Source: Mytilus californianus
Taxonomy: Eukaryota
Assembly (NCBI RefSeq): GCF_021869535.1
Contig: NW_026262668.1
Coordinates: 85,622,001 to 85,686,000, forward strand
Direction of reading: 5' to 3'
DNA: 64,000 nt
Shown in pieces: positions 5,949 through 53,170 of this stretch (the stretch's first letter is position 1; the number at the start of each line of letters is the position of its first letter). The notes under the pieces were generated by a model. It worked only from the letters and a program-made list of their open reading frames with translations. It did not search any database and was not told where the DNA came from. The translations under genes and the position numbers were made by a program.

Positions 5949-6603
5949 ATGATGTCCTCCTTATCCGAAAGATCTGAGAAGTCCGATTCGGCGAATTCGT
6001 CACAGATAAGAACGCCTAAACCAGTTTACGTTTGTTCTGTTTGTACAGATGAAGTAAAAGCCAAATATCTATGTCAACCTTGTAAAAAGTACTTTTGTGA
6101 AAAGTGTAAGAGCAGTCATACAAGTAATGTTCAAAACGCTAAACACAAATTCACAGAGATTTTGGAAACGGAATCAGAGACACCGGATTTGTCACTTGAT
6201 TTGGCGAAAGTGAGTTCACCTGAAATGCAGAAAACACCTCCAAGAGTAGTTACATCGTCGCCCAAAAATACTGGTCGAAGTACTGGTAGAGCTAAAAATC
6301 ACAATGATCATACGGTACACATAGATTACGGTAATACTCCTCGAGGAAAGTACAGCAAATGTCAAAGGCATCCTACTAAAGACATACAACTTCATTGTGT
6401 CGAGTGCAACAAAATTGTATGCAGTGAATGTATTGTCGAAATACACCAACGCCATCAGTTTGTCAGCATAGAGGAAGCGGGGACAAGATTGAAGGGTCAT
6501 TTCCATACCATTCTTGCTCCGGTAAAAACATTTTATCATGATGAGCTTGAGACGGCGTATAATAATTTGGAAGTTGCTGAAGAACAGTACAGTGTTAAAA
6601 CAG
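5949..6603 (+). CDS. RING-less TRIM-like protein (B-box1, B-box2, coiled coil, NHL/beta-propeller), exon 1 of 2; join(5949..6603,8729..10008) = 644 aa
   Basis: B-box1 CSVCTDEVKAKYLCQPCKKYFCEKCKSSH...H and B-box2 CQRHPTKDIQLHCVECNKIVCSECIVEIHQRH. Donor AG|GTACAT at 6604, phase 1 (655 nt). Confidence 0.9.
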
Positions 6604-8728
6604 GTACATGCTTTACATAGTATTTGGTTTTTTATGTATCTTAATTTTTACCTAAATTTTCGACAGTGAAAAAAGGTCTGTTATTTGATCATTGATATTC
6701 TCGGGAAAGCGCCCCACTTCAATTATCTTGGGGGGCACAACTTGTAGTGAGTGTTTTTGCTCCACCAAAACCTCACTGTAACTATAATATGAAGAACAGT
6801 AATAAAAACGCTGCGCTTTTGTTTGTTTTTTTTTACGTGCACGTAGTGATCATTTCGATTCGTGAATTGGTGCATCACATTCTCTCTTTTTCATGACTAA
6901 GTTATGCTAGCTATTCTCGATGAAGTCGAACAAATGCAAATGTACATTAACTTAAATGAAATAAAGTGATAAAGTGTGAGGGGGACGATTTCGGCATTTT
7001 AAAAAGAGTCACACAAAGCGCAAATTTCAATATGAATATTGTGAAGCCCATTATAATTGCCATATAGCAGAATAGGAAATGAAGATTTTTGAAAACTTCT
7101 CACTTTGCGCAGTATTTTTATTTTTATTACTAATACATATTTGTTTTACTTTTGAAAACCATCAATGTCTTTCTTTTCAATGTGCACAAGCAACGTTTTA
7201 TCTTGAAACTGCATTAACATACCCTATGCCGATTGCTTCCATCAATTGTCGGTATGAAACAAACTACGAAGTAAGTATAAATGCAGGTATAGTAAATCAT
7301 CAGCTTTGAAATGAACAACATGCGTATACAATTTCATGGCTATTAAATACTGACCGAATGAACCCAACTTAAAATTAGGTTTCTGGCTTTCTTGTAACTA
7401 AATGTGCGTCATTATCATTCGCTCCTTGCGGAAAAAAATGAGACGTGTATATGATTGACCTGTGCACCAGGTTACGTCCTTTGTGCAATTAACCATCATT
7501 ATGGTTATTTTATACAAAATCTAATTCTTGATCGTTTAGAACTGATTCTCCATTGTCAATAAAATTGTCTTCTATGCTGGTATTTTATTAGTTTTTCTTA
7601 CTATTGTGCAAAATGATAGAGCCATTATCAATAGATCCAAATTACTTGATAGCATTTTGTGGATCTGTTGACGAACGGTAAATTGGGTAGTAAATTAGAT
7701 CAATAAATAACAGTGACCGAGACTGAGGCTTTCCTGAAGCGGAAAATCAGAATAAGACGAGCTATATAAGATACATGCCTAGACTTCTGAAGTTCTGTCA
7801 TTATTTTCCTTTTCGTTAATTTACAAATATGTTTTTCGCATATACGCCAGGTCAACATAAAATCATATCATATATATAAACAGCCACCCTTTATGGAGCG
7901 AATACAATAGTCAAGCTTTCTGGGCGAAGGGTTAAAAAAAGTACATACTAAGTACGTGTTTGCAATTATTATGATGTAACTCATACATTTTTTCTATTGG
8001 AGATAGACCATAGATTTTTAAATTCCGTAATATCTCCAATTCTTCAATGCTTGATAAGCTGAGATTTACACATAGATTGAGCAAAAATATTTGAAAAATA
8101 GTGGAGATATAATACTATAAAATATTTTCTCGTAGAATGGAATGTAGAAATCTCGTATAATTATAGTTTTAATGGGAGATAGACAATCCCCCCCCCCCCC
8201 CCCCCTCCAAAAAAAAAAGACATAGAACACCATAAGAATCACACGGCAATATCCATTGTTATCATTCATGAATATTAAATTCTGATTAAAAAGAAATAAA
8301 ACAAAGAGGACACTAACGCGTAACAAGCTCTGAAAATAGCATATTAGGTATTGCAAATTCAAACTGTAAAAAGTTTTAAGTAATCTGAGTTTTCAGAGAA
8401 ATGCTATAGAAAATGAGATCATTAAGTTTCAAGCTAGTTGAATAAACAAACGAAAAATTAAATTCTGATCCCACAAAGAGATCCTCTGTTTATGTTGGTG
8501 ACTGCCCATTCAAGATATTTACAACCGGGGAGTATGATTAGGAATCAGTTTGATATTTTAACATCTGCAGGATGCTATACAATAAACATGCAGAATTTTA
8601 ACTGTCTATTATATACCAAAGAATCGCACGGCGAATAAATTTCTCGAGATCTACATAAAACTGTGTCTTAAATGCTTACTAACGATACCTTAAGTTATCT
8701 TAAATCTATATGAATATTTTCTTTTCAG

Positions 8729-10008
8729 AACAAACTATTGACGAGATACATAAAAGGGCTAGTCAGCTCCATGATGACATAGACCGTATACGAGACAGCA
8801 TTATATCTTCTATAGAAACTAAACAGAAGCAAGACATGGATGAATTTGTAACAACGAAAGAACTTCTTAGTGATAGACTTGCTCATACAGGTGACGTCAT
8901 TAGTCGCGTAGAGAACGCAATCGAGAACGACAACGACACATCAATGCTTAGATCAGAGCATGAATACACAACACTTATTACCAATGTTGATAGAAATTTA
9001 TCTCTCCGAGAACCAAAACCATCACGATTTGCTGCAGGATTGTCTACTGAAGAACGCGTAAAAGATCTTTTTGGTAATACAGTTCAGATTGATGAACCGG
9101 ACAATACAATGGCGACTTGGCGCATGCGTGGCGAGGACAAATTAGAAATTAGCAAAGATCTTGATCTCTCTCGTGTTCTCTCCGTACCAGTCGGAGATGG
9201 TCAGCCAATTCATACCATGGTAGCCCTAGGACATGCAGAAGTTTGGTTTTCAACTTTATCAAATTCTAAACAAGCACAGCTATTTGGAATAGATGGTCGA
9301 ATTGAAAAACCGTTGGAGTTAGAATTTAGTGTGAAAGATCTATCTGTTTCTCGTCCAGGTGATCTGTTCTTATCTTGCTTTGACACGCGCTGCGTTAAAC
9401 GCATCCGCTTAAATGGAACAGTTGAGACATTTTTCAATACATCACCACTTCATCCTTTAGGAATTCATGTATTGAGAAGTGGATCGGTAATGGTGTGTGT
9501 TGTAGATCAGATTTCAACTAATATGAAACAGATGAAACCATACAGCAAGCGTCAACTTGTCAAGGTATCGAAAACAGGCAAGGTTATTAAACGCATGGCT
9601 TATAACCTTGACCTAAGGTTGTTCACCCTTCCATTCAAAGTCAATGAATCAGTCGATGAAGAGCTTGTTGTGTTGGATAAATCCAGTAAGGATAAGGGTA
9701 GACTAATCATGTTTACCCGAAATGAGCAAATTAAATTCGTATACAATGGTCCACAATCAATTCGAACCGAATATCCATTCTGTCCTATGGACCTAGTGTG
9801 TGATAATTTTGGTCATACTATTGTTGTCGATTCAAACAACAATGCAATTCACATGTTAGATAAATTCGGAAAGGTTTTAAGATTTCATCAGATAGGTCGA
9901 GACTGGATTGATATTCCATGGTCAGTTGCTGTTGACAATAGGGGACTTATGCTCGTTGGTGATTCTGCAGGGACAATGCATATTATGCGTTATCTACTTA
10001 ATAGTTAA
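8729..10008 (+). CDS. RING-less TRIM-like protein, exon 2 of 2 (coiled coil plus NHL-like propeller)
   Basis: Acceptor ttttcag at 8727-8728; G|AA gives Glu in frame with exon 1. Heptad-rich coiled coil, then propeller-blade motifs (PLGIHVLRSGSVMV, PMDLVCDNFGHTIVVD, PWSVAVDNRGLMLVGD). Stop at 10008. Confidence 0.9.
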
Positions 10009-23665: not shown

Positions 23666-23880
23666 CTTCGTGTAAAAGAGGTTGAGAAAATATTACCGTG
23701 GACTACCAACATTTTTCGTGAACATTTAAATCTCAAAATGACAAAAACATTTACGTGTTGTAAAGCAGAGCAAAAACATGTGTATCCGTAATTGTAGAAA
23801 TGGGCTGTGTCTTGTTATATAAGAACGCATTTGACACTCATGAATAGCAATACTATTGTATTTTATTAGTTTAAATACTA

Positions 23881-23969
23881 TTATGTTACTTTCAAACGCA
23901 GTATTAACTGTCCAATAACCTGTCGTCGCATTCTGTCCAACGCTGTGATTTGAAACCCACTTTTCGTAG
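23881..23969 (-). CDS. PHB/PHA depolymerase-like secreted esterase, exon 10 of 10
   Basis: Acceptor ttttag at 23971-23970; G|CT gives Ala. ATKSGFQITALDRMRRQVIGQLILRLKVT*, stop at 23883-23881. Confidence 0.85.
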
Positions 23970-24044
23970 CTAAAAATAAATCCAAATAAATATATTTATT
24001 ATAAAGCAAACACAACTTCTAATCATATACTTATTATTTAATAT

Positions 24045-24225
24045 TTCCGTCCCTATCCACTATACCCGCATTTTCCAGTGGCAGTCCAAATTTCTCCGAC
24101 CTTCATCCCGGACAGCCTCTATTACATGACCTACATATTGTATTCATTGTTAATTTGTTCCCGTCCTGAACACTCATGACATATTTGCCATTGGACGTTA
24201 AACAATCAACCATCAATCAATCAAT
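24045..24225 (+). mobile_element. SINE 3' part (tail GGACGTTAAAC..(AATC)n)
   Basis: CCCGTCCTGAACACTCATGACATATTTGCCATTGGACGTTAAACAATCAACCATCAATCAATC. Related minus-strand tails occur at ~42300-42360 and ~43340-43400. Confidence 0.6.
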
Positions 24226-24389
24226 ATTATTTTTATACGAGAACGAACTGTATTCCTTTTCTCGCCGACTTTTCCCCTCAATCGTATGAAGCATTTTATA
24301 CAGGAGCATAGTTATCAAGCTGTAACTTTACCGATTGTGTCCTGTTTCCGATTGAGACTGAGTGTGAATTCGCAATGCGGGTTATGTAT

Positions 24390-24990
24390 TCATAGCAGGA
24401 GACGTTAACCCTATTGTCACACCCTCTGTCTGGCTCCTTTTTTGTTTGTTACCTTGAAATGTACCTTCTTAATCGTTCTATGAGTTTGAGAAAGCAACTG
24501 TTGCCGAAATTTCCTATTTTGATGTAGCATCATTAGATTATTCCAGCAGCACCTACATATGAAATATAATCGAGTTGTTACGATATCCCCGGGCTTGGGC
24601 TTCTTATAATGATTGAGTTGACGTTAGCAAAGATTTATTTAACCAATGGTACTTTACTGCAAAGTTGGTGTCATTTCTTCGAAATTGTAAATGACGCCAT
24701 GATGTTTTGATTGACCGTTATGGAATATTTGTGTTACAAAGGAAAGCGGTAGAACGTTCCACTTTTCGTCACAATACCGTTCACTTTCCCTACTAATGCG
24801 AGTTATGGATCTATTTGTACTTGACATTATCTAAACGACAGGTGTCACCAGTTGAACAGGAAATGCTAACCCTTCCAGGGCACTTTAGATCACCCAATGT
24901 TGGTGGGATTCGTATTGCTCAATATAAGTCGTATGTGTAGCGCATTGAGGACTACTGTTTGTCTGTTTGCTTTTTTGTTTTCGTTTTTCG
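24390..24990 (+). mobile_element. Degraded Penelope-like RT C-terminus plus 3' tail
   Basis: IPAAPTYE..SSCYDIPG / ELLRYPRAWASY...RHDVLIDRYGIFV resembles the RT C-terminus at 22900-23100. Tail GGTGTCACCAGTTGAACAGGAAATGCTAACCCTTCCAGGGCAC..AGATCACCC. Confidence 0.55.
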
Positions 24991-25053
24991 TTTGGGTTTT
25001 GATTTTTACAGTTGATAACAATTGTGTACGGATACATCAATCAGAAAGGAGGT

Positions 25054-25143
25054 CAATCTAATTAAAATATAGAACTCGGATTTCGTTATACTGCATACGT
25101 ATGCAGTATAACGAAATCCGAGTTCTATATTTTAATTAGATTG
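25054..25143. repeat. Perfect 90-bp palindrome (45-bp arms, no spacer) flanked by a 9-bp direct repeat AAAGGAGGT
   Basis: 25054-25098 is the exact reverse complement of 25099-25143. AAAGGAGGT lies at 25045-25053 and 25144-25152. Confidence 0.95.
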
Positions 25144-25732
25144 AAAGGAGGTGTGAGGTCACAAAGCACAAAAGCGCAGTGGTCCTATCAATAGCAAAAA
25201 CGTCCGGCGCCGATATTTCTTCCCAAAAATATAAATTGAAATTATCAATCCTATTATTTAATACTATACATAGGAAACAAAAAGATAAAAACAAATCTAA
25301 TCGTTTTGAAAAATGATCTATTGATCAACCAATGAACACCAATGAACACTTCTTTGCTTTGAAATTATTGTCAATAATTGTCTATACTCCACTGAAGTGT
25401 TTAGGTTAGGTCATTGCGTACAACTGAACTGCAGAGTGTGTTCACTATGTCTGCTCGCATAAACATTACATGTTCGAGATAGTTTATGTTGCATTTGTTT
25501 TTTTCCGTATTTATCTGCATGTAAGGTAGATGCAATAATACCTTTTTTATAATATCACATTCAATTGTTAAATTTTCAGCTGAAATTATGTTCCATTTCC
25601 CTGTATTTAGCTTAACTGTAACAAGAAATCTTTGTCTGTTTTTTTTTTTTAAATAATGAATGATTGATATACACACAGATATAAATGATTCCGCGATCCC
25701 ACAATTGAGAAAAAGACGAAATACGGATTTAC

Positions 25733-25884
25733 CAAAATATGCGCCAGTGTAACCAAACCAGTCCCAGCAACCATTTAGATTAGTTGGAATCGGTGTAATC
25801 TGTGGATACAATATGATGATATTATTCGCTTCTCCGACTTCATTGTATCCGGCGTGCTTCACATATTCGTCATTAATAAAATGT
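25733..25884 (-). CDS. PHB depolymerase-like, exon 9 of 10
   Basis: Acceptor ttttag at 25886-25885, donor G|GTAAAT at 25732. HFINDEYVKHAGYNEVGEANNIIILYPQITPIPTNLNGCWDWFGYTGAYF carries the family motifs GYNE.A..NNII.LYPQ and GCWDW.GY. Confidence 0.95.
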
Positions 25885-26405
25885 CTAAAACAAAAACAGA
25901 TCTCTGCAGTTATTTTGTATATTTCAGTCAAGTAACAATCAATAGAACAGATTGTTTGTTATTGTGAACTAAACAGCATATATTCATCATAAGCGTTGCT
26001 TTATATGAGACATGATATAATATAAAAAAAAGGATGAAACGAAATGTATTAAAAATTCTTTGTACATAACTTTTGTCCATGTTATAATTTGTCGCTGGAC
26101 GTTTAGCAATCGATAAATTGAATAAATTAATATAAGTACCTCAATGATCTCGATATTTATGTTTTTATGTTACTTATTGACTAAGCATTATTTCTTCTGC
26201 ATTTTTAATAGTTTTCTCTATGATACAGGTTTTTCTTCTTCGATTTCAAACCCTATGTAGTCATTTTTTTCGTGTTGTTTTTCTTTGTTTATTTTTTAGT
26301 TCGTTTTGCCAACCATTATTTTTAAAAGTTTAAAGGCTCCCCATTGTAAACTGAGCTGTTAGCTTTTAATTTTGATAGATGCATCATTTAAAAAGGTAAA
26401 CTAAC

Positions 26406-26448
26406 CTTCCTTGTTGACATCCATGAAGTGCAATGTGAAGTTTGCATT
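26406..26448 (-). CDS. PHB depolymerase-like, exon 8 of 10
   Basis: Acceptor ttttcag at 26450-26449, donor AG|GTTAG at 26405. KCKLHIALHGCQQGR contains the HGC oxyanion motif. Confidence 0.92.
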
Positions 26449-27060
26449 CTGAAAAGAATTCGAAATCATTTTTCAAAGATAGATTTCGTAAGTGTTTCTA
26501 TTAGTAGTTGTGTTAAAACATCATCTTATTCAAAATAATCTGCCTATCAACATCTCAGTATTTTTTTGCATTTTGAGAAAGCAAACTTAGTTTAGAACTT
26601 TATAATCACGATTGTTTAAAAAGAATAAGATTATAGATCTGTATTTTAATTGTTTTTGTTTTGTTTTTTTCATTTTGTTGTTATTTAATTATTATTATTT
26701 TTTTGTGCTTCGTACCAACCAGATGAATCAATGTCATTCCATTTCCAAAATATTTAACTGTCTGTTCATATGTTATGCTGTTTCGCCACTGACTTAGGTT
26801 AGGGAGACTATTGAGCACGTGGAAACATGTTTAACCACGCCACTTTCCATTTGCTGTCTGTCATATTTGTTTTTCATTTATTGTTTTTGCATAGATAATG
26901 TTTCCTCTTTTGAATTTTTTTATTTTGTCATACCGATGCCTTTTACATGAATTATAGCTTACTTAAAGGTACGAGTTTTGCTCATTGTTGAAGTCTGTAC
27001 GGTGATCTCTGGTGGACGGTTGTCTCATTTGGCAATATACCAAATTATCTTTATATAAAT

Positions 27061-27678
27061 AATAAAATGCTCCGCTGGGCGCAGCTTGATACGACCGCAG
27101 TGGTCGAACCCTGAACAGTTGGGGCAAGTATGGACACAACATTCAATCTTGATACAGCTATGAATTTGGATTGTGATTAAATATTTGACACAGCATACGT
27201 TTCAGACACAGAATGAATGTGGTCTTAGAACTTAAAAAGTTTTAATTTACCTATTCAAACCATATCATTATTATTTGCTTTTATATATAAATCAGAAATA
27301 ACCAATTTAAAATGGAAAATTTTAAAGAAAAAAAAAAAGGAAAAAAAAATCCCCCCCCCCAAATTTTTGGAACCCCCTTATGATTCATCCCCCCAAACTC
27401 AATAACAGCCTTCCCTTTGTGGTATGGTACCTTGCAGTACAATTTCAGAGAGATCCATACACTTGAACACAAGTTATTGTCTGGAAACTAGAAAAATGCT
27501 TGTTTTTTTGCCCCTTTTTGGCCCCAAATTCCTAAACGTTTAGGGCAATTACCCCCAAACTCAAAACCTGCTTTCTCTTTGTGATATGGAACCTTGTAGT
27601 ACAATTTACAAAAGACGACGACGACGCCAACATCATACCAATATACGACCACAAAATTTTTTTGCGGTCGTATAAAAA
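27061..27678 (-). mobile_element. HINE family B, short internally deleted copy
   Basis: Same termini as 53596-56380 in reverse orientation (TTTTATACGACCGC...GTGGTCGTATATTGG; ...GCGGTCGTATCAAGCTGCGCCC..CGGAGCATTTT). It lacks the 35-bp and 397-bp arrays. Confidence 0.88.
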
Positions 27679-28749
27679 CTGGAGGAAACTAGTTTCATAT
27701 ATCTGCTATAAATAATTCATGTGGTTATGGGACATATTTATTTCACTAAAGGCGACAAATTAAAATTATAAAGTGTATAGTATTATGTTTTATTACTTTT
27801 TAATTTTTGCTCAAGCATAAACATCTATTTTGAGTACAACCATATAATCGCAAAAATCAATACTAATGTCTGCCAATCGGATGTCTTAAGATCATATTAT
27901 AGAGGATATTGTTTGGCAGATTTATAGTTCTATTTTATTATGAATTTTGAGACCCAAAAAAAGGCCCTATTATACATTTTCCTTTCATTGAAATATCAAC
28001 AAAACACTAACTATACTGACTTATGTTATCTTTATTAAACGTTTTGGGAAGGCGCAACTTATCTCACTGGCATCGCAAGTTGGAAGACGAGAGGATAGGT
28101 CATGCAGTATAATATTTTTCCTCGATTTATTTGTAGCAATCAACTAAGAAATTATAGTTTTATTGTTTATGTATTCTGATTTCACAAAACTATACTTTAC
28201 AACAATTCTAAAATCATAAATAAAATTGTTTTTTTTTATATAATAAACACAACATAAACAAAAATGTAGGTACAAAGGGGAACAAAAACTCGTAGGTCAA
28301 AAATGAACTGACAATACCATGGCACAAAAAACAATGAAGAGAGGAACCCAGCTCAAAAACGGGATTGATTTCACTTGCTTTAGAAGTGTTGGTATGTTAC
28401 CTCGTTATTTGTGTCAGCTTCATTCTGATATGACTCTTTACTAGGTTCAACATAATATCTGGGTTAATGGAAACTGCATTAGCGGAACAATGCATTAAGT
28501 AATATTATAATTATTATAGCAAATTTTTATATTACGATAATAAAATGATATTTTGTACATATGTAAACAAAGATTTCCATGTTTTGTTGGTAGATTGCAT
28601 TCAAAGTAAAGTTTTATGATGTGATCTCTTACCTCATCGTTGACTCATGCTTTTTACAATGAGCGTTAGAAATTGAATTTGAATTTGCATCGAAACTTAA
28701 AGACCAAAGTATTTCACGATTAACTCAATTGCGCTTGACAGTCTTAATC

Positions 28750-29062
28750 TTCATCTTAAAAATGTTTTCTTGGATTTACCTATATTACCTTCATCAGGAA
28801 CGCTCAAAACCGAATATTTGAAAGCCAATGATGTATAAGAACCGAAACAGATGAAAGGCTTTATAAACAAAAAGGACCTAAAAATAATAGTCAGATTAAT
28901 CTAAGGTCAACTTTGCCTGAGGTAGTTGAAACCTTAGTTTCTTAAATATTTTTGAATTTATAAACAGACAACTAAAGAACGGTTTGTTATAAATCATGTC
29001 AGTACCAAAGTACTGACTACTGAGCTGATGATATCCTTGGGGACTGAACACCTTATAATATC
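28750..29062 (-). mobile_element. Family E repeat (Penelope-like 3' end) with a hammerhead-like remnant
   Basis: Reverse complement of 57290-57600 (ATCATCAGCTCAGTAGTCAGT.CTTTGGTACTGACAT; GCGTTCCTGATGAAGGTAA). Confidence 0.7.
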
Positions 29063-29117
29063 AGTTACAGAGTGGATGAAACCACCCTTGACGACGAACA
29101 TTCTGCAGAGGGTGGTC

Positions 29118-30395
29118 CGGAAGCGTATTGGGGACATAGTAAAAATAAAATTGGCAGTGAACTTTTTTTTCTAAGTCGAAAATTTGACATTGAACTCCAA
29201 TTTTTAACATTTCAAGTCTCGAAATTTTGACTTTTTTAAAACTCGAAATTTCCACTTTTCTTAAACTCAAAATTTCCACTTTTTTCAAAATCGAAATTTC
29301 GACTTTTCTTAAACTCGAAATTTCGACTTTTCTTAAACTCGAAATTTCGACTTTTCTCAAACTCAAAATTTTCGACTTTTCTCAAACTCAAAATTTCGAC
29401 TTTTCTTAAATCATATTAATTTCGACAAACTCGAAATTTCAACTTCTTTTAAACTCAAACTTTTAAAATCTCGAAATTTCCTCAGTATTTATACGTTTGT
29501 GATTACATGTATCACATTCACAGTCATTTATACTACATCATAAACTTGATTAGCTTTTTTAATAAACTAAACCATTTAAAAGAGGTTATTTTAGATAGGA
29601 AATATTTTTTGCGGAAGAATAAAAGGAATATGTTTCACGTACACATATCTTCTCTCAAGTCTGGACTTCAGATATGTGTATCAAGACAACCCCGTTATTC
29701 CGACACACCTATATTACGCCATACATTAATTCAACAGTCTAATATATAAAGACATGGGTTAATAGTTGTGGCATAAGAATGCCAACTTGTAGAGTTTAAT
29801 CAATGTTCCAGAAAAAGAACCAACATTTCAAAATTCTAAAACTAGAAAACTGAGCAGCTCATGAGTCGTCATGAATATGCATGGTATATATCTGCCACTT
29901 GATTTACCATTGTTTAAACAAGGAAAAATCAGTGACTTGCTTTTGGGAAACCAAACAGGCCTTTAAAACCAACCATAAAACACGGGATGCTAAATGTCCA
30001 CAGATCTGACGATCCTATGACAGTGTCGTGAAAGCTAAAACATGGAATATGGAAAAACAACATTTTTTTCTGTCAACATGCATGTTCTTTCCGAATGAAA
30101 CTCTTCAATATTAAATGCTTATCCATATCATAATTGAAGAACAAAACCAATTTCTGAAAATACATTGCCAAAAGATTTTGAGTTTAAAGTCGAAATTTCT
30201 ACTTTTTATAAAGTCGAAATTTTGACTTTTTAAAAAGTCGAAATTCCAAGATTTTAGAAATTCAAAATTTCGAGATTTGAAAAGTTAAAATTTGCAGTTA
30301 AAGTCGTAATTTTAAGATTTGAAATGTCAATTTTCGACTTTGAAAAAAAAGTTCACTGTCAATTTTATTTTTACGATGTCCCTAATACGCTTCCG
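29118..30395. mobile_element. Foldback/MITE-type DNA transposon with long TIRs and 24-bp subterminal tandem repeats
   Basis: Left end CGGAAGCGTATTGGGGACATAGTAAAAATAAAATTGGCAGTGAACTTTTTTT; the right end is its near-exact reverse complement, ending ...AATACGCTTCCG|TA. 24-bp units AAACTCGAAATTTCGACTTTTCTT at 29210-29480 and inverted at 30180-30350. Confidence 0.88.
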
Positions 30396-30524
30396 TAGGG
30401 AGGTATCGAACGTCAGTGTGGGTTTCATACAGTGAACTTTATTGCCGAAAAACTTTCAGAAAATTTCAAGATATATAACAATAGAAATTATTTTTATGAA
30501 GAAAAAAAACTTGCCCATACTCAC

Positions 30525-30636
30525 TTGTTTGTTTGTCTGCACAATCAGAAGGAACATAAATATATCCATTATTGTCAAAACTGTATGTTATCGGTACAGA
30601 TAGGTGGAAAAATGTTGACTGGTCAAAGGTCTTCAA
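30525..30636 (-). CDS. PHB depolymerase-like, exon 7 of 10
   Basis: Acceptor catatag at 30638-30637, donor A|GTGAGT at 30524. LKTFDQSTFFHLSVPITYSFDNNGYIYVPSDCADKQT carries the family motifs FDQ and GY.YVP..C. Confidence 0.93.
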
Positions 30637-30866
30637 CTATATGTAGTAATATATTGTATGCAAATATTAAATCATGTGTGCTGCCTTCTCTGAAATAGAT
30701 CTTAGTAAACATGCATAATATAAATCAAATAAGGTCACAAAATCTTTAAACTGCAAAATACTAAATTGTATAGGCATTGGCAAATTTTCTGTACGTTTTT
30801 GAATATATTGTTTAATAAACTTTAAAATATATCAAAACAGCATACAAAACAACACTAAAAACATAC

Positions 30867-30899
30867 CTGTCCAGTTAACGGTTTCCCTGCTTCTGGTAT
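30867..30899 (-). CDS. PHB depolymerase-like, exon 6 of 10 (33-nt microexon)
   Basis: Acceptor ttttcag at 30901-30900, donor CAG|GTATGT at 30866, phase 0/0. IPEAGKPLTGQ. Confidence 0.8.
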
Positions 30900-30959
30900 C
30901 TGAAAATTTAAATTGTTTCATAATTCTATATAATAGAGGATTTTATATTAGTTTCCACT

Positions 30960-31300
30960 TGGTCGATTTCTCTGCTGGTGGACTATAAGTCCCCGAGGGT
31001 ATCACCAGTCCAATGCTAGCATGAAAACACGGATACGGATATTTCTAGATTGAAGTTGTTTTTATAAACATTTCGGAAATAATTTTGAACTAAGTAATAT
31101 GTTTCCCTCATGCAATGGTCTGATTCATTGTCAGGATTTAGCTATACTTTAGGCCCTTATTGGTTTGATCAGCTCTTCAACGTTTTTTGATTGATTTTGG
31201 ATTTTCAAACATTTCGGCATCGAGCATCACTGCACTGAAGAGACATTAATTGTTGGAATGCGCGAATACTAGTGCAGTAAAATTGGCACCGTTAGTGTTA
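30960..31300 (+). mobile_element. Family E-related Penelope-like 3' end with a degenerate hammerhead motif
   Basis: GGTGGACTATAAGTCCCCGAGGGTATCACCAG is shared with 57293 and 29020-29050. GCATCA-CTGAAGA-GACA..TGTT-GGAA-TGCGCG..TAGTGC at 31223-31275. Confidence 0.55.
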
Positions 31301-32426
31301 TTCTTCATGCGACTATTGTCCGATTATATAGATATAAATACATTTACGCATTTAAACATCATGAAATATCGACTACGATAACGCGGAATGGCCGCATCCG
31401 ACTACCATAGGATTTGGGTTATTAAAAGGAACATCTACATCAAAACAAAATCGAACCAAAAAAATACCACGAGATTTTAATATCTGGGTTTCAACAATGA
31501 GCCAGGACCCTGGAAAAATTGACTTTCAGACTGTATAAATCGTTTAACTTTACTTTTCACAATCAATCAATAAGTATGAATTTGAATAAACTTTCAGAGT
31601 TATCTTTCGTTTTCCGTAAAACATCAAACCTTTACTAATAAACTAGATTATAAGTTGTGATACATTTTAATATCTTGTTTGTATATTGTTATATCCTATC
31701 TGATTACTATATATAACTTACATGTATTCTGTCTGTCTTTAATTTTGCTTAGCTATATTTTATGACTGGCTTTTTTCTTTTTTCCCTCGCTTGTTTCGCC
31801 ATGGTCTTGTCTGTTTTTTTTGTTATTGTAGCCGAGGTATATCCTTTTTTTCTTTGTTCTTTAAGTCATGGTGTTGTATATTTTCCTTTATTTTTAGCTG
31901 CTGATCCCAATTAATGTCATATCAACCTGTTTTGGTTGCTCATCCAATCTTGTCAATATAACAGAACTATAAACAACTGTCATAGAAGTGGGAGGTTTAG
32001 CTAGCTATAAAACCAGGTTTTACCCACCATTTTCTTTGGAAAATGCCTGTATCAAGTCAGGAATATGATAGTTGTTTTCCATTCATTACGTTGGTTTGTT
32101 AAGTCTAACGTTTGATTTTTTTCAGTTTTAAAGGACTTCTCCTTTTAGAATCTACCTTGAAGTTCGGTATTTTTGTTATACTTTTTTTGAAGGTGCATAG
32201 AAAAATGTGACAAAGATTTCATTAATGTGCACATCATTTAAACGATATAAGATTTGGAAAGCAGAACGTAGAACATCAAAGTCACTGAAGACGTGTCATA
32301 TGGTACATTGTAAGACATATCAAGTTAAAGCTCGGTGCCACATATCAACTAGCTATATTATTGCTAAGACAAAAGTGTGATGCGGGTAGACGGACTCATG
32401 GATCCACGGAAAAAGAGATGTTTTAC

Positions 32427-32540
32427 CTTTAGGTCGCCATATATCCAGTTAAGAAGTTCAAAAGCAGCGTTATATCCACAGTTGTTCAGATAATTGCTTT
32501 TTGATAGAACGTTACATGTCCCTCCATAATTGTCAGTCGG
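32427..32540 (-). CDS. PHB depolymerase-like, exon 5 of 10
   Basis: Acceptor tttttcag at 32542-32541, donor AAG|GTAAAA at 32426. PTDNYGGTCNVLSKSNYLNNCGYNAAFELLNWIYGDLK. Confidence 0.95.
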
Positions 32541-33036
32541 CTGAAAAAGTATATTGATATGTTTGATAAACCATATTTTCATGTAACATAACCATATATA
32601 GATTATTCTAATGAATAATTGAATTTTCTGTAGTCATTTTACATGGCATATCAGACGATTTTATTGCTTGTAGCATTTCTGTATACTTTCGGCAGTCATA
32701 TCACCTCTTTATAATTGATCCAGAAATATCAAAGTAGTATGATAACAACACTTTTGTAACGTTTAATATCTATATAATCAAGGCTGATCATGAATATTTG
32801 TCAACACGTTTAACGTGTACAGTTGTATATTCGAGTTTATATACTTCACGATCTTGCGTGGTCAATCGATATCGTTCGAGGGAAAACACTCACAATTGAC
32901 AATGCAATAACGCGTATAACGTCATTTCAAAGAGAATTTGAATACGCTGCCTGGAATAATGCTTTGGAACTTTTGGTTGCGTTTACATGGAATATCATGT
33001 GCGTGTGTATTTTTAAGTCAGTTAACAATATATTAC

Positions 33037-33128
33037 CTGACAATGTTCTGCATTTATATTGAATACTGTTTTCACATTAGAATGTAACGTGTAATGGTTG
33101 TAATAACGTTGTATGTTTGGTCCATTTC
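33037..33128 (-). CDS. PHB depolymerase-like, exon 4 of 10 (catalytic His)
   Basis: Acceptor ttgcag at 33130-33129, donor CAG|GTAATA at 33036. GNGPNIQRYYNHYTLHSNVKTVFNINAEHCQ (AEH, His161). Confidence 0.92.
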
Positions 33129-33363
33129 CTGCAATTTAAATATATTTGCCATTTATAACTGTCAACATTTAGTGTTTGATGAGTCGTATACAAATTTCAT
33201 AGAGTGCTAGTCGTAGAATGAAAGATTCTATATGATACTTTTTTCCTTTAAAATATTGCAAAATTTCTGAAAAAAACAAATATTTGAAACTGTTTCTTAA
33301 TTGATTACTTTTACTTATTCAACTTTCTTGTAGAAGATCGAAGTTCATAAATAAATGGCTTAC

Positions 33364-33558
33364 CGGGTTTAACAACGGAGTCGGACTGGCCAGCAAAAAT
33401 GTATACTTTATCGTGTCGCATGTGGTATGTAGAGTCAACATTTCCGAGAAAGGCACCAGAAGATGTCAAAAGTTCAAATGAACTGACAGATTCCAAGTTA
33501 GGTGTTTGCATGCAAGCTGCTGCACCTACCAAATTACCACCAGAGCAAGCAAACGGAA
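33364..33558 (-). CDS. PHB depolymerase-like, exon 3 of 10 (catalytic Asp)
   Basis: Acceptor tttttcag at 33560-33559, donor G|GTAAGC at 33363. VPFACSGGNLVGAAACMQTP...KVYIFAGQSDSVVKP (Asp127). Confidence 0.95.
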
Positions 33559-33809
33559 CTGAAAAAGGAAGTGAAAATGTTCAAAGGCAGCATTTAGTAA
33601 ATTTGGTGTTGATGGTGTGTCTTTGGTAGTCTCTGTTAAATTAATCCACGACTTTTTTTATAACCGGCCAATTTACGCCTGACATATACCAGAAACATAA
33701 TCATTTGTCTATTTCATGCTGACCATGTTTTGTCAATTTTGTCAATATTTTTTTGCATATTCTTTCTTAATTCTCGAGCTGGTGTTTGTATATAAAAGGT
33801 GTGTTCAAA

Positions 33810-35225
33810 CAGGTGTAACACCCTCAAAAACAGGCACATACAGAAGTTGGTGGGGTTAAACTAGTTTGCTGGCGCAAAACCCTCCCCTAACTTGGGACAG
33901 TGGTGTAACAGTACGATATAAGAACAAACTATAAAAATCAGTTGAAAAGGGCTTAACTTATCAGATCGATACAAATCTAACAAAAACACAGACCGGACGT
34001 GGCAGGGTACTTATACATCCCCACAACAAAAAGACACTAAGTACATATCTGAAAGTACTCTCAGTTATTGACAGCTAGTTCAAAGCCAATAACAACTACG
34101 GAATAGCACATCCTAAATTTTACGGTGATGTTGTTTACCGAGCCCTGAAATTTATATACGATCCGGGTAAACTTATCAATCCTTTAAATAAACTTATTCT
34201 AAAAGGTTACCATTTCAACACAGTAATTAGATCTTTGAATATTGTTTTTATTGGTATAAATATTCATTTTGTTATCAGTGAATTAAAATCATACTAATAG
34301 TTTTGTTATACACATATGCACTTTAACGGTACTACAATCTGTCGATCGTTTGACATTTTGGCATTGCACAAGGTCATGTTTTTCTCTGACTGTTAATGAC
34401 GTCTTTATACTTAATTCATTAGATGTTGGTTGTGTACTGATTGATATTTTAGTCTTAGATACATGATTTTTTCTATTAGTTGTTATTGGCTTTGAACTAG
34501 CTGTCAGTAACTGCGAGTACACTCAGATCTGTACTTAGTGTACTTTTTGTTGTTAGGGAAGAGGAATACCCTGCCACGTCTGGTCTGTGTTTATGTTTGA
34601 TGTTTTTTCTGTTTTTTATCAATCTGATTAGTTAAGCCTTTTTCAACTGATTTTTATAGTTTGTTCTTATGTTGTGCTGTTACACCATTGTCCCAGGTTA
34701 GGGGGAGGGTTGAGCGCTCACAAACATGTTTAACCCCGCCACATTCTTTATGTATCCGTCCCAAGTCAGGAGCCTGTAGTTCAGTGGTTGTCGTTTGTTC
34801 ATGTCTGTCATATTTATTTTTCGTTAATTGTTTTGTTTTAAATTAAGCCGTTAGTTTTCTCAATTGAATTGTTTCATATTTTTCATGTCGGGCCTTTTAT
34901 AGCCGACTATACGGTATGGGTTTTTTTCTCATTGTTGAAGGCCGTACGGTTGCCTTTAATTGCTTACATCCACTTTATTTGAACTTTGGTGGATAGTTGT
35001 CTCATTGGCAATCATACCTCATCTCCTTATTTTTATAATAAAAAAAATCATGCATCTAAGACTTAAAATATCAATCAGTACACATCCAACTTCCAACGGA
35101 TATAGTGTAAAGACGTCATTAATAGTCAGAGAAAAACATGACCTTGTGTAATGCCAAGATACAGGTATCAACAGATTGTAGAGCCATGAATGTGCATACG
35201 TACATAACAATAATGTATGCATACA
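33810..35225 (+). mobile_element. Penelope-like element 3' end with inverted flanking copies of its own UTR (family D)
   Basis: 34100-34297 is an open frame GIAHPKFYGDVVYRALKF...KGYHFNTVIRSLNIVF...SY* (PLE RT C-terminus), followed by the UTR at 34298-35035. ~33855-34099 is the reverse complement of ~34477-34740, and 35036-35220 is the reverse complement of ~34300-34470. Confidence 0.75.
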
Positions 35226-35258
35226 AGTATCTTAATTACATTGTTTTAAAAAGTTTAC

Positions 35259-35381
35259 CTCCGGCGATAATCCCAACACCCATAAAATCAGCAGAATGAA
35301 TCACGTGCATTTGTGTTGCCATAGCAGCACCTGACGATATTCCAGATATTGATACCTTTTTCTGGTCAACATTATATGACT
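35259..35381 (-). CDS. PHB depolymerase-like, exon 2 of 10 (catalytic Ser, GISSG)
   Basis: Acceptor atttcag at 35383-35382, donor G|GTAAAC at 35258. SYNVDQKKVSISGISSGAAMATQMHVIHSADFMGVGIIAG. Confidence 0.95.
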
Positions 35382-35815
35382 CTGAAATATGATAGAAAAT
35401 AGAAAAAAATCATATATTTACTATGAAAATGCATTGCTGACTTCTTTGGAAACCCCCATTTCATATGTAGTCGAGAAATCTATTTCATGTTTCTTTTCTA
35501 TTGCCTCTCATTTTTTGAATTCAAATAAATGTGGCATGCTGCACATTTCTGGTAATAAATGGTAACATTGAGTGATTATGCATCATTTAATTTAAGAAAT
35601 AGAAACACAAGCAAATATTTTCCTCATTAATTGACTGTCGTCTACTGCATTCGTAGTACGCCCATCATATGCTTACGATCTGCATCTTAACCTAAATAGT
35701 AAACACAGAACTCAAAATATGTACCTGTATGTAGCCTAACTTATAATTATAACGGAACACACGTTATCTCTTCGGATAATATAAAGAGATAATAATTAAT
35801 GTATTATTACTTTAC

Positions 35816-35894
35816 CCAATCTATCAGCTTTTCCTTCGATAGTTGACAAGGCATGGAGAATCAAAATTATAATGAATAATTTTAGTTGCACCAT
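35816..35894 (-). CDS. PHB depolymerase-like, exon 1 of 10 (signal peptide); the ten exons join to 1032 nt = 343 aa plus stop
   Basis: ATG at 35894. MVQLKLFIIILILHALSTIEGKADRL is a hydrophobic signal peptide. The phase-1 donor G|GTAAAG at 35815 matches the exon 2 phase. Confidence 0.85.
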
Positions 35895-36224
35895 TTTGAA
35901 AAGTTGGCAACCATAATTTGTCAAAACTGATAAAACACGCATCTGTATGTTGACTTTCATATAACAGCTTAGATATTTCTATATTTATCGACAATGTATA
36001 TTTGGATCCACAATCATCTAGATAGTCACGGAATGATGGAAATAAAGCGATGCATGCTTAAGAAGTTTTTAACTCGAATAAAATAGATGTAGAATTTAAG
36101 AAAACATGCGTTTAATGCCGTTTTAATACATGGTAGTGCGCTTGTTCTACCCGAGATTCATGTGTACACAAGACCCGAATTATATATATTAAAAATGCCA
36201 TAGTGTTAGATAAAGATGTAGTTC

Positions 36225-51665: not shown

Positions 51666-53170
51666 TATTTTTGTATCTCTGCTATATTAAGAGATGATAA
51701 AATAATATTAAGCATGGACCTTTTTATCTTATTCACTTTCATGGAAGTTCATTGAACATAAATTCCTGCCACCACTGTCCTTCCTATATTTTACATCGTG
51801 AGGGGTAATATTACTTGGAAGAACACCAGCAGGATTGATGTGAAGGACGCCATGGGTTCAAACCAGCGGATCTGACCTAACGATGAAGGGAGCATTCACT
51901 GACCGTCTGAATATAAGCACTGTCATGGAGTTGCTCTCTTTATTGAAGGTCTTTCATCAACACAGAGGACGAGAAAGGTGATGGTTTCCAATGTCCCGTG
52001 CAGTAATCTTCTCAGAGGAATATAAAAACAACAACAGGTATTGCTTGTTATCTTCAAGGAAAAGATCATTTAGTACTTGCAGATTTGTCAGCGAAAGTTT
52101 TAGGCAGTGAATTTTGCAGAATTGAAATCATGCACTTCGAATTCGTCGTCATCGAACCATTTATTTGTGGTTAGATTGCATATTGTATTAAGATGACAGT
52201 GTTCCGATATCACCACTCCATGATGTAATTAATGTACATGTACGGCAACGTTATACTTGATAATATAATAACCTCAATACGGACGAAGTATAGTTTCTGC
52301 AATATAACTTCTGTTAATCAAACTGTACCGAATTGTGATCATATACAACGCATTTTTTTACATAATCTTTATTCTGAATTGCCATAACGTCATTTGAACA
52401 CAATTTATTTCTTGAACTCAATGCGATATTTTTAATATAGACCACCAATAATTGTAACGGTTCTGAATGCAAATGTTCATAAAATTTACTTTTTTATGTG
52501 CATATCTCCCATAAGAAATGGAACCACTTAACTTCGACATAAACAACTGGGAAAGCGATTACAATGCTGGGGTGGACGGGCACTTTATGCCCTCGCTCCG
52601 CCTTCTGACAGGGGACACAATCTGTTTTCGTTTAGAGTACTCATCAAAGTGCTTGTGAGCCCGAATGTGGTTAAGATATCCTTCAATTTGAATAGTGAAC
52701 TAAAAACTATTATTGTATTTAAAAGCAAAGAAACATGCTTAGGCAATATTTTGAATTGAGTTATCTCCGTTTGTTCATAATTAATGATAGAATACATAAA
52801 TATAATAAATTCGTAGTACATGGATTTTTTCAGCAACTTGTGTCTTAGAAAAGGGTTTTCTTTTCAAGTATCAGGGAAAAACATGCTGCATAAATTGCTT
52901 CAAAAGGCCATGGTTAAGATTTAAAAATTGTTCATCTCCGGACCCTGCATTATGTTGTTTGTATTCACGGGCATCATCAAGAATTGGTTGACCGATATGA
53001 AGCGTATGTGTCGAACAAGAAATATATTTTCGCAGTCTTTGATCTTCAGTTAACAGAGAAGTCAAGACTTGAACATCGATACACTATTGCTGCCTCTAGA
53101 GAAGATGACTTAATATAGAAATATACAGCCTTCTCGTATAACATCAATTCTTCTGTATTGGAATTTGAAG

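What the first reader, a model, noticed from the sequence alone, without database searches (positions are those of the whole stretch)
23881..35894. Complete 10-exon animal gene for a secreted PHB (bioplastic) depolymerase-like enzyme with an intact catalytic triad
Seen in the sequence: ten minus-strand exons (35894-35816, 35381-35259, 33558-33364, 33128-33037, 32540-32427, 30899-30867, 30636-30525, 26448-26406, 25884-25733, 23969-23881), all with GT-AG boundaries and matching phases, join into an uninterrupted 343-aa ORF. It has a signal peptide, an N-terminal GISSG nucleophile (Ser42), GQSD (Asp127), AEH (His161), an HGC oxyanion motif and GCWDW.GY. Established: this layout (lipase box near the N-terminus, oxyanion motif C-terminal, Ser39/Asp121/His155) is the circularly permuted extracellular PHB depolymerase of Penicillium funiculosum and type II bacterial PhaZ. 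The Asp-His spacing here is the same (34) and the Ser-Asp spacing is similar (85 vs 82). PHA degradation is classically microbial, although animal homologues have been reported, for example in gutless annelids. Inference: a filter-feeding bivalve secretes its own enzyme to digest the storage polyester of ingested bacteria and could attack PHA bioplastic particles. Nine spliceosomal introns filled with host repeats rule out microbial contamination. The ORF track recovers only fragments, so automated annotation could miss or split the gene.
Basis: partly seen in the sequence, partly recalled or inferred. Interest (0 to 1): 0.88.

Follow-up and report, generated by a model that had tools for sequence, protein, structure and literature searches.

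The report
Mussel PHB depolymerase gene, already known
The window holds a real, intact ten-exon California mussel gene for a secreted enzyme of the family that breaks down the bacterial storage polyester PHB, but this animal enzyme family, bivalves included, was published in 2026, so the gene is an ordinary member.

Summary
Ten minus-strand exons (35894..23881), all with GT-AG borders, splice into a 343-aa ORF. An RNA contig joins exons 2-5 at the predicted borders. The protein is colinear with the circularly permuted Penicillium funiculosum PHB depolymerase (2D80). S42, D127, H161, H258-G259-C260 and W306 lie in invariant or near-invariant family columns. A 97%-identical ortholog folds (pLDDT 96) onto 2D80/2D81 at TM 0.86-0.90. 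Zeidler et al. (Nat Ecol Evol 2026, PMC13642032) describe animal PHA depolymerases in nine phyla, including a bivalve clade, with four further animal enzymes assayed besides Olavius. RefSeq already names the 335-aa orthologs in four Mytilus species "poly(3-hydroxybutyrate) depolymerase-like". The M. californianus RefSeq model (XP_052090783.1, 260 aa, "uncharacterized") starts at Met84 and lacks the signal peptide and catalytic Ser42. All nine introns are shared in position and phase with scallop, amphioxus, frog and acorn worm. dN/dS is 0.09. A TAA>TTA change adds eight C-terminal residues. No mollusc enzyme has been assayed. The scan's notes hold no earlier report of this family.

The parts
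35816..35894 (-). Exon 1: start codon (35894-35892) and residues 1-27. These include the hydrophobic N-terminal signal-like segment (residues 1-21, 35894-35832).
   Evidence: An RNA contig covers 35829-35963. The N-terminus is conserved in four congeners. Mean Kyte-Doolittle hydropathy of residues 5-17 is 2.3.
35259..35381 (-). Exon 2: residues 27-68, holding the lipase box G40-I-S42-S-G44. The Ser42 codon TCG is at 35337-35335.
   Evidence: it aligns to 2D80 chain 6-45, with Ser42 on the residue mutated in 2D81 (S39A); the RNA contig joins it to exon 3.
33364..33558 (-). Exon 3: residues 68-133. It holds Met84 (33511-33509, where the RefSeq model starts) and the catalytic Asp127 (33382-33380).
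33037..33128 (-). Exon 4: residues 133-163, with the catalytic His161 (33045-33043).
32427..32540 (-). Exon 5: residues 164-201.
30867..30899 (-). Exon 6: residues 202-212 (33 nt).
   Evidence: The depth of run X3 in this bin fits the contig. Both flanking introns are conserved in scallop, amphioxus, frog and acorn worm.
30525..30636 (-). Exon 7: residues 213-250.
   Evidence: It is identical to the RefSeq model.
26406..26448 (-). Exon 8: residues 250-264, with the oxyanion-hole motif H258-G259-C260 (26425-26417).
   Evidence: It aligns to H228-G229-C230 of the 2D80 chain, which is Cys250 in the paper's numbering.
25733..25884 (-). Exon 9: residues 264-315, with the NIIILYPQ and GCWDWFGY blocks. 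The Trp306 codon is at 25760-25758.
   Evidence: it matches 2D80 chain 237-293 at E=8e-5 on its own; 1143 library proteins match at E<=0.001, and most of the full-length ones carry the block near the C-terminus.
23881..23969 (-). Exon 10: residues 315-343 and the stop TAA (23883-23881). Codon 336 is TTA (23907-23905) where congeners have the stop TAA, which gives the tail LILRLKVT.
23862..23867 (-). AATAAA polyadenylation signal, 14 nt after the stop codon.
   Evidence: This is sequence only.
35940..35960 (-). Two in-frame upstream ATGs (35960-35958 and 35942-35940) in the 5' leader. They have weak Kozak context and are not conserved in M. galloprovincialis.

Best explanation
This is the Mytilus californianus ortholog (LOC127727708) of the animal polyhydroxyalkanoate depolymerases (PHADs). 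These are single-domain, secreted, circularly permuted alpha/beta-hydrolases of 'domain type 2', in which the lipase box comes before the oxyanion hole, as in the Penicillium funiculosum PHB depolymerase. Shown here: the gene is intact, spliced and transcribed, under strong purifying selection, and inherited vertically with its exon structure from at least the bilaterian ancestor. Its protein keeps every catalytic residue in place: nucleophile Ser42, Asp127, His161, the backbone oxyanion hole at Cys260, and Trp306 next to the active site. Inferred: after cleavage of a signal peptide of about 21 residues, the enzyme is secreted, most likely into the digestive tract or into phagolysosomes. There it hydrolyses the short-chain PHA granules of ingested bacteria to 3-hydroxybutyrate, which enters ketone-body metabolism. 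Ser42 attacks the ester carbonyl, His161 and Asp127 act as the charge relay, and the backbone amides of Ser43 and Cys260 stabilise the oxyanion.
For: The gene model and splice sites are. An RNA contig joins exons 2-5. Exons 2 and 9 alone hit 2D80 at colinear positions. A profile of 38 homologues matches 2D80 over chain 2-314 at E=5e-88, while canonical family members (8IY8, 8DAJ) match in swapped halves. Pfam PF10503 hits the homologues in swapped order. All 16 invariant columns of the family alignment are kept in the window protein, and the nearly invariant ones (Ser42 and Trp306 among them) are kept except Pro>Ser178 and a conservative Ile>Val108. The AlphaFold2 model of the 97%-identical M. 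coruscus ortholog has pLDDT 96.4. Foldseek ranks 2D81 and 2D80 on top at TM 0.86/0.90 and rmsd 1.5 A, and the next hit reaches only TM 0.38. dN/dS against M. galloprovincialis is 0.09. Nine of nine introns are shared in position and phase with scallop, amphioxus, Xenopus and Ptychodera. The tree places the protein in nested Mytilus, pteriomorph bivalve and mollusc clades. Published assays show PHB and PHB/PHV hydrolysis by PHADs of Olavius, a sponge, an earthworm and a springtail, and report a mollusc clade split into bivalves and gastropods (PMC13642032).
Against: No mollusc PHAD has been assayed, and the published activities of the animal enzymes are modest (nmol of monomer per mg of protein). 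The tissue of expression and the secretion were not tested here: run metadata are coded and no signal-peptide predictor was available. RNA depth at the exons is low (word depth about 5). The window protein replaces a nearly invariant Pro (37 of 38 sequences) with Ser178 and carries an extra 8-residue tail. Only the main text of the paper was readable, so I could not confirm whether Mytilus is among its 66 listed species.
Confidence: 0.85

Rival explanations
1. The protein is a secreted carboxylesterase of the same fold whose natural substrate is not PHA. Candidates are feruloyl or other plant and algal cell-wall esters, cutin-like polyesters or small esters. On this reading PHB hydrolysis is only a weak side activity.
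For: The wider PF10503 superfamily mixes PHB depolymerases with feruloyl and acetylxylan esterases (8IY8 and 5X6S). UniProt names one amphioxus homologue 'Feruloyl esterase'. The reported animal PHAD activities are low. The substrate-binding residues are only partly conserved in animal PHADs, at 8-42% identity.
Against: The only whole-chain structural and sequence match is the PHB depolymerase 2D80/2D81. The feruloyl esterases match half of the chain in permuted order, at TM below 0.3. All five animal enzymes of this clade that were tested released HB monomers from PHB (PMC13642032). Trp306, the equivalent of Trp307 beside the 2D80 active site, is kept.
Confidence: 0.1
2. In M. californianus the locus is mainly expressed as a 5'-truncated transcript, the RefSeq 260-aa form starting at Met84. 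That form would lack the signal peptide and the nucleophile, so the gene would be functionally decaying in this species.
For: RefSeq XP_052090783.1 starts at Met84. One low-depth RNA contig runs 60 nt from exon 3 into intron 2, at 33411-33618. The ancestral stop codon is lost.
Against: Exons 1-2 are intact, with perfect splice sites and a conserved sequence. An RNA contig joins exon 2 to exons 3-5 and another covers exon 1. dN/dS is 0.09 over all 335 shared codons.
Confidence: 0.03
3. The gene is microbial contamination or a recent horizontal transfer into mussels.
For: PHA depolymerases are classically bacterial and fungal, and the nearest solved structure is fungal.
Against: The gene has nine GT-AG introns, two of which carry abundant host repeats. 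All nine are shared in position and phase with deuterostome genes. Orthologs are present in five Mytilus species. The gene tree follows mollusc phylogeny. GC content is that of the surrounding window, about 0.31-0.35.
Confidence: 0.01

Closest known systems
Animal PHA depolymerases (PHADs) of Zeidler et al., Nat Ecol Evol 2026 (PMC13642032). The type example is the Olavius algarvensis PHAD.
   Same: Both have the domain-type-2 order with the lipase box before the oxyanion hole, and both have a signal peptide. The sizes are close (333 vs 343 aa). The triad numbering is almost identical (S42, D127, H167, C259 vs S42, D127, H161, C260). Both genes have ten exons and nine introns (19 kb vs 12 kb). 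Molluscs, with a bivalve subclade, are already in their tree.
   Different: The mussel enzyme is not assayed. A mussel is a gut-bearing filter feeder and not a symbiont-digesting worm. I could not read their species table, so I do not know whether this species is listed.
Mytilus orthologs in RefSeq and GenBank: XP_076090184.1 (M. galloprovincialis), XP_071156318.1 (M. edulis), XP_063420049.1 (M. trossulus) and CAC5419973.1 (M. coruscus).
   Same: They are 94.6-97.3% identical over 335 residues. M. galloprovincialis has the same nine introns. Three are named 'poly(3-hydroxybutyrate) depolymerase-like' by RefSeq.
   Different: The window protein runs 8 residues further, because TAA became TTA at codon 336. 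The same-species RefSeq model XP_052090783.1 has only 260 aa and is named 'uncharacterized protein'.
Penicillium funiculosum PHB depolymerase (PDB 2D80, and the S39A mutant with a 3HB trimer, 2D81).
   Same: Both have a single-domain, circularly permuted alpha/beta-hydrolase fold. They are colinear over the whole chain, at 33-34% identity, TM 0.86-0.90 and rmsd 1.5 A (measured on the ortholog). Ser, Asp, His, the HGC motif and the CWDW Trp align, and the Asp-His spacing is the same (34).
   Different: It is fungal and not animal. The fungal enzyme has an insertion of about 11 residues before NGCWDW. The Ser-Asp spacing is 82 vs 85.
Canonical (domain type 1) PF10503 esterases and PHB depolymerases, such as Lihuaxuella thermophila 8DAJ, and feruloyl esterases such as 8IY8.
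   Same: They share the superfamily and the motifs HGC, GxSxG and NxCWxW.
   Different: The order is the opposite, with the oxyanion block first. Only half-chain matches are found, at TM 0.38 or less.

Membership tests
Animal / P. funiculosum-type (domain type 2) extracellular short-chain PHA depolymerase | The lipase box G-x-S-x-G lies N-terminal to the oxyanion-hole H-G-C motif. This is the circular permutation relative to domain type 1. | tested here: met
   GISSG is at residues 40-44 and HGC at 258-260. Exon 2 matches 2D80 chain 6-45 and exon 9 matches chain 237-293. Pfam PF10503 and the canonical PDB members match in swapped order.
Animal / P. funiculosum-type (domain type 2) extracellular short-chain PHA depolymerase | The catalytic triad Ser-Asp-His aligns with Ser39/Asp121/His155 of 2D80, and the oxyanion Cys aligns with Cys250. 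| tested here: met
   Asp127, His161 and Cys260 lie in columns invariant in 38 and in 73 homologues, and Ser42 lies in a nearly invariant one (36 of 38). These are the columns that the profile aligns to chain S19, D101, H135 and C230 of 2D80, which is +20 in the paper's numbering.
Animal / P. funiculosum-type (domain type 2) extracellular short-chain PHA depolymerase | The whole chain folds like 2D80. | tested here: met
   This was tested on the 97%-identical M. coruscus ortholog P0188 and not on the window protein itself. The model has pLDDT 96.4 and pTM 0.92. Foldseek gives 2D81/2D80 at TM 0.86/0.90 and rmsd 1.5 A over 325 columns. Distances within the triad could not be measured, because no coordinates are returned.
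Animal / P. funiculosum-type (domain type 2) extracellular short-chain PHA depolymerase | It is a single catalytic domain without the linker and separate substrate-binding domain of bacterial PhaZ. | tested here: met
   The profile and the fold match cover almost the full 343 aa, leaving no extra domain.
Animal / P. funiculosum-type (domain type 2) extracellular short-chain PHA depolymerase | An N-terminal signal peptide, meaning the enzyme is secreted. | tested here: inconclusive
   Residues 5-17 form a hydrophobic stretch (mean hydropathy 2.3), followed by S-T-I-E-G. The mature N-terminus of 2D80 aligns near residue 25. No signal-peptide predictor was available, and in-frame upstream ATGs exist in this species.
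Animal / P. funiculosum-type (domain type 2) extracellular short-chain PHA depolymerase | It falls inside the animal PHAD clade, in the mollusc and bivalve subclade. | tested here: met
   The ML tree of 49 animal sequences gives Mytilus 100/99, pteriomorph bivalves 100/97 and molluscs 95/83. Cutinase, lipase, bacterial and fungal outgroups were not included here. The paper did include them.
Animal / P. funiculosum-type (domain type 2) extracellular short-chain PHA depolymerase | It hydrolyses PHB or PHBV to 3-hydroxybutyrate. | not testable with these tools
   This is shown for the Olavius, Amphimedon, Lumbricus and Folsomia enzymes (PMC13642032). It has not been shown for any mollusc.
Canonical Pfam Esterase_PHB (PF10503, domain type 1 order) | A colinear match to the model above the gathering score (23 bits). 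| tested here: not met
   Single exons score 13 bits or less. The full-length homologues match in two pieces in reversed order, and several fall below the cut-off. The protein is a permuted relative and not a colinear member.

The most novel reading that the evidence does not exclude
In mussels the family has at least two loci, and this copy is a secreted digestive enzyme. That would give a dominant coastal filter feeder direct access to bacterial PHA and let it erode PHA-bioplastic microparticles. Separately, the gene's nine introns, conserved from molluscs to vertebrates, give evidence independent of the weakly supported published tree that the enzyme was already in the bilaterian ancestor with its present exon structure.
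Probability: 0.4. Interest if true: 0.4.

Novelty: already known. Interest (0 to 1): 0.2.

Why it matters
The biology is the interesting part: animals, and not only microbes, can depolymerise bacterial storage polyester. That was published in August 2026 for nine phyla, including bivalves, so this locus only adds a member. Three things are useful. First, the public M. californianus model is 5'-truncated and unnamed. It lacks the secretion signal and the catalytic serine, so homology-based surveys of this species would score the enzyme as absent or dead, and the ten-exon model corrects that. Second, the complete conservation of intron positions and phases between mussel, scallop, amphioxus, frog and acorn worm supports vertical inheritance. 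I did not find that comparison in the paper's main text. Third, mussels are tractable and ecologically dominant filter feeders, which makes them a sensible place to test whether animal PHADs matter for PHA turnover or for the fate of PHA plastic.

Tried and rejected
The spliced 343-aa protein has no reference and was not pasted into any tool. I used in-frame exon references, local scripts and the ortholog P0188 instead, so Pfam, PDB and structure results for the full-length window protein itself are indirect. Exon 3 alone against PDB gave only chance hits. Pfam on single exons gave only sub-threshold hits, with exon 2 scoring 13 bits on PF10503. tblastn of the protein against the window found no second copy. 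Rfam found nothing in the gene. The paper's supplementary tables are not held, so I could not check whether Mytilus is among its 66 species. Literature searches for a mussel-specific study returned only reviews. The scan's notes have no entry for this family by words. The joints table of read laying was filled by abundant intronic repeats, so the exon junctions had to be read from the contig-piece table. Only 30400-36000 could be laid, so exons 8-10 have no read evidence. I considered an N-terminal extension from the upstream ATGs and rejected it as the conserved start, because M. galloprovincialis has an in-frame TGA at -15 and a 15-nt indel there.

Full report
OBSERVATION. I spliced the ten minus-strand exons as listed. 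Every intron begins with GT and ends with AG, the phases are consistent, and the 1032-nt CDS translates into 343 residues ending in TAA at 23883-23881. An independent exact spliced mapper, given only the protein and the genomic DNA, returned the same unique chain. An AATAAA signal lies 14 nt after the stop. The window holds no second copy. Its GC content is uniform, at about 0.31-0.36.

TRANSCRIPTION. I laid four RNA runs on 30400-36000. A 621-nt contig (run X3, record 17) lies on 35259-35382, 33363-33558, 33037-33127 and 32424-32540 with consecutive record coordinates, so it joins exons 2, 3, 4 and 5 exactly where predicted. Its remaining 75 nt equal exon 6 (33 nt) plus 42 nt of exon 7, and the depth in those bins fits. 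Another contig covers exon 1 and the leader up to 35963. Expression is low (word depth about 5). One low-depth contig runs from exon 3 into intron 2. Introns 1 and 5 carry repeats with enormous RNA-contig depth, which marks them as abundant host repeats.

WHAT THE PROTEIN IS. Exon 9 alone matches the Penicillium funiculosum PHB depolymerase 2D80 at chain 237-293 (E=8e-5). Exon 2 alone matches chain 6-45, and its GISSG falls on the GLSSG whose first Ser is the one mutated in 2D81, S39A. The non-permuted PHB esterase 8DAJ matches the same two exons in the opposite order.

Exon 9 searched against 1.84 billion representatives gave 1143 hits at E<=0.001. Most full-length hits (about 300-360 aa) carry the block near the C-terminus. 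A profile of 38 full-length homologues matches 2D80 colinearly over chain 2-314 at E=5e-88, whereas the feruloyl esterase 8IY8 and 8DAJ match half-profiles in swapped order. Pfam PF10503 hits the homologues in two pieces in reversed order.

I added the window protein to the alignment. It keeps all 16 invariant columns: G40, G44, Q50, S56, D127, H161, C172, P241, H258, G259, C260, G276, P291, C303, D305 and G308. It keeps the nearly invariant columns as well, Ser42 (36 of 38) and Trp306 (36 of 38) among them, except Pro>Ser178 and a conservative Ile>Val108. Counting along the HMMER alignment, the profile's Ser, Asp, His and HGC columns fall on chain S19, D101, H135 and C230 of 2D80. With +20, these are Ser39, Asp121, His155 and Cys250 of the published numbering.

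STRUCTURE. The window's spliced protein has no reference, so I folded its 97%-identical M. coruscus ortholog P0188 with a 73-sequence alignment. The model has pLDDT 96.4 and pTM 0.92. Foldseek against PDB puts 2D81 and 2D80 first (TM 0.86/0.90, rmsd 1.5-1.7 A, 325 columns, 33-34% identity). The next hit, 8DAJ, reaches TM 0.38. With the chains superposable at that level and the catalytic residues aligned, the triad must be assembled as in 2D80. I could not measure the distances directly.

SPECIES AND PUBLIC ANNOTATION. The closest full-length proteins form one 90% cluster. It holds 335-aa proteins of M. coruscus, M. galloprovincialis, M. edulis and M. trossulus (94.6-97.3% identical). The three RefSeq entries are named 'poly(3-hydroxybutyrate) depolymerase-like', and UniRef calls the M. 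coruscus one 'Poly(3-hydroxybutyrate) depolymerase'. The same cluster holds M. californianus XP_052090783.1, 'uncharacterized protein LOC127727708', which has 260 aa and is 100% identical to residues 84-343 of the spliced protein. It confirms exons 3-10. It also shows that the public model of this species starts at an internal Met and lacks exons 1-2, and with them the signal peptide and Ser42.

Two small peculiarities remain. Codon 336 is TTA where M. galloprovincialis has the stop TAA, which adds LILRLKVT. In-frame ATGs at -48 and -66 precede Met1 without an intervening stop. Their context is weak, and M. galloprovincialis has TGA at -15, so Met1 (AAAATGG) is the conserved start.

CONSTRAINT AND ORIGIN. 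Against the M. galloprovincialis CDS, dS is 0.235 and dN is 0.021, so dN/dS is 0.09.

I fetched the genes of seven other animals and mapped their introns exactly. On a common alignment, all nine mussel introns (phases 1,1,1,0,0,0,1,2,1) lie at the same column and phase in scallop, M. galloprovincialis, amphioxus, Xenopus and the hemichordate Ptychodera. Ciona keeps six, with a seventh shifted by one codon, and Daphnia keeps five. The deuterostomes share a tenth intron inside GCWDW. The published Olavius gene also has ten exons and nine introns.

A maximum-likelihood tree of 49 animal sequences nests the window protein with M. coruscus (100/98). That pair lies inside Mytilus (100/99), then pteriomorph bivalves (100/97), then molluscs (95/83). 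A second Mytilus paralog clade lies nearby. Contamination and recent horizontal transfer are excluded.

WHAT IS KNOWN. Zeidler et al., Nat Ecol Evol 2026 (PMC13642032), describe exactly this. They report animal PHADs of domain type 2, with 195 sequences in 66 species of nine phyla, and a monophyletic mollusc group split into bivalves and gastropods. The triad and oxyanion hole are fully conserved relative to 2D81, and about 75% of the sequences have signal peptides. Enzymes from Olavius, a sponge, an earthworm and a springtail release HB monomers from PHB and PHB/PHV. The authors propose that animals feeding on microbe-rich material use the enzyme to reach bacterial carbon stores, and perhaps to degrade PHA plastics. 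No mussel-specific study turned up.

MECHANISM AND CONFIDENCE. Shown: an intact, transcribed, constrained gene encodes a protein with the fold and every catalytic residue of a type-2 PHB depolymerase. Inferred: cleavage of a signal peptide of about 21 residues, secretion into the digestive system, and serine-hydrolase attack on PHA ester bonds (Ser42 as nucleophile, His161 and Asp127 as relay, Ser43 and Cys260 amides as oxyanion hole), yielding 3-hydroxybutyrate. I put family membership at about 0.95 and PHB depolymerase as the main activity at about 0.8. The main rival is a different ester specificity within the same fold (about 0.1).

VERDICT. This is a correct and careful reading of a real gene, but the family and its presence in bivalves are already known. 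The added value is the corrected M. californianus gene model, the cross-phylum intron conservation, the evidence of purifying selection and the lost stop codon.

Noticed in passing
window 51872-51953 (+): Rfam hit to the mir-46/mir-47/mir-281 microRNA precursor family. It covers the full model, at 58.5 bits against a gathering score of 44.7, E=1.6e-9. The host gene was not examined.
   Followed up: no
window 5949-6617 (+) and 8710-10005 (+): A 223-aa ORF has two B-box zinc fingers (PF00643, E=2e-12), so it looks like a TRIM-type gene. A neighbouring 432-aa ORF has no Pfam match.
   Followed up: partly
window 31896-32269 (intron 5) and 33766-35261 (intron 1): Repeats in these introns reach a summed word depth of up to about 5x10^5 in RNA-run contigs, with many variant copies and internal joints. 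They are very abundant, transcribed dispersed repeats of the mussel genome. No Rfam family matched them.
   Followed up: no
window 33509-33511 (Met84), RefSeq XP_052090783.1: The public M. californianus protein model for this gene is 5'-truncated. It has 260 aa, starts at Met84 and is named 'uncharacterized protein'. Congeners have 335-aa named models. The second M. californianus paralog model (XP_052067163.1, 211 aa) is also shorter than its M. edulis counterpart (333 aa).
   Followed up: yes
L001, L004, L005, L002 (amphioxus, Xenopus, Ptychodera, Ciona): The deuterostome PHAD genes share a tenth intron (phase 2) inside the GCWDW motif that mussel and scallop lack. This is either a deuterostome gain or a loss in the mollusc lineage.
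   Followed up: partly
L007:1-898 (+), Daphnia pulicaria: A second gene whose product carries a faint PF10503 hit lies directly upstream of the Daphnia PHAD gene. This suggests a tandem duplicate.
   Followed up: no
P0014 (Mytilus edulis CAG2225172.1, 399 aa): This M. edulis model of the paralogous locus matches the window protein in two separate blocks (residues 27-141 and 212-335) and is longer than its relatives. It is probably a mis-joined gene model.
   Followed up: no
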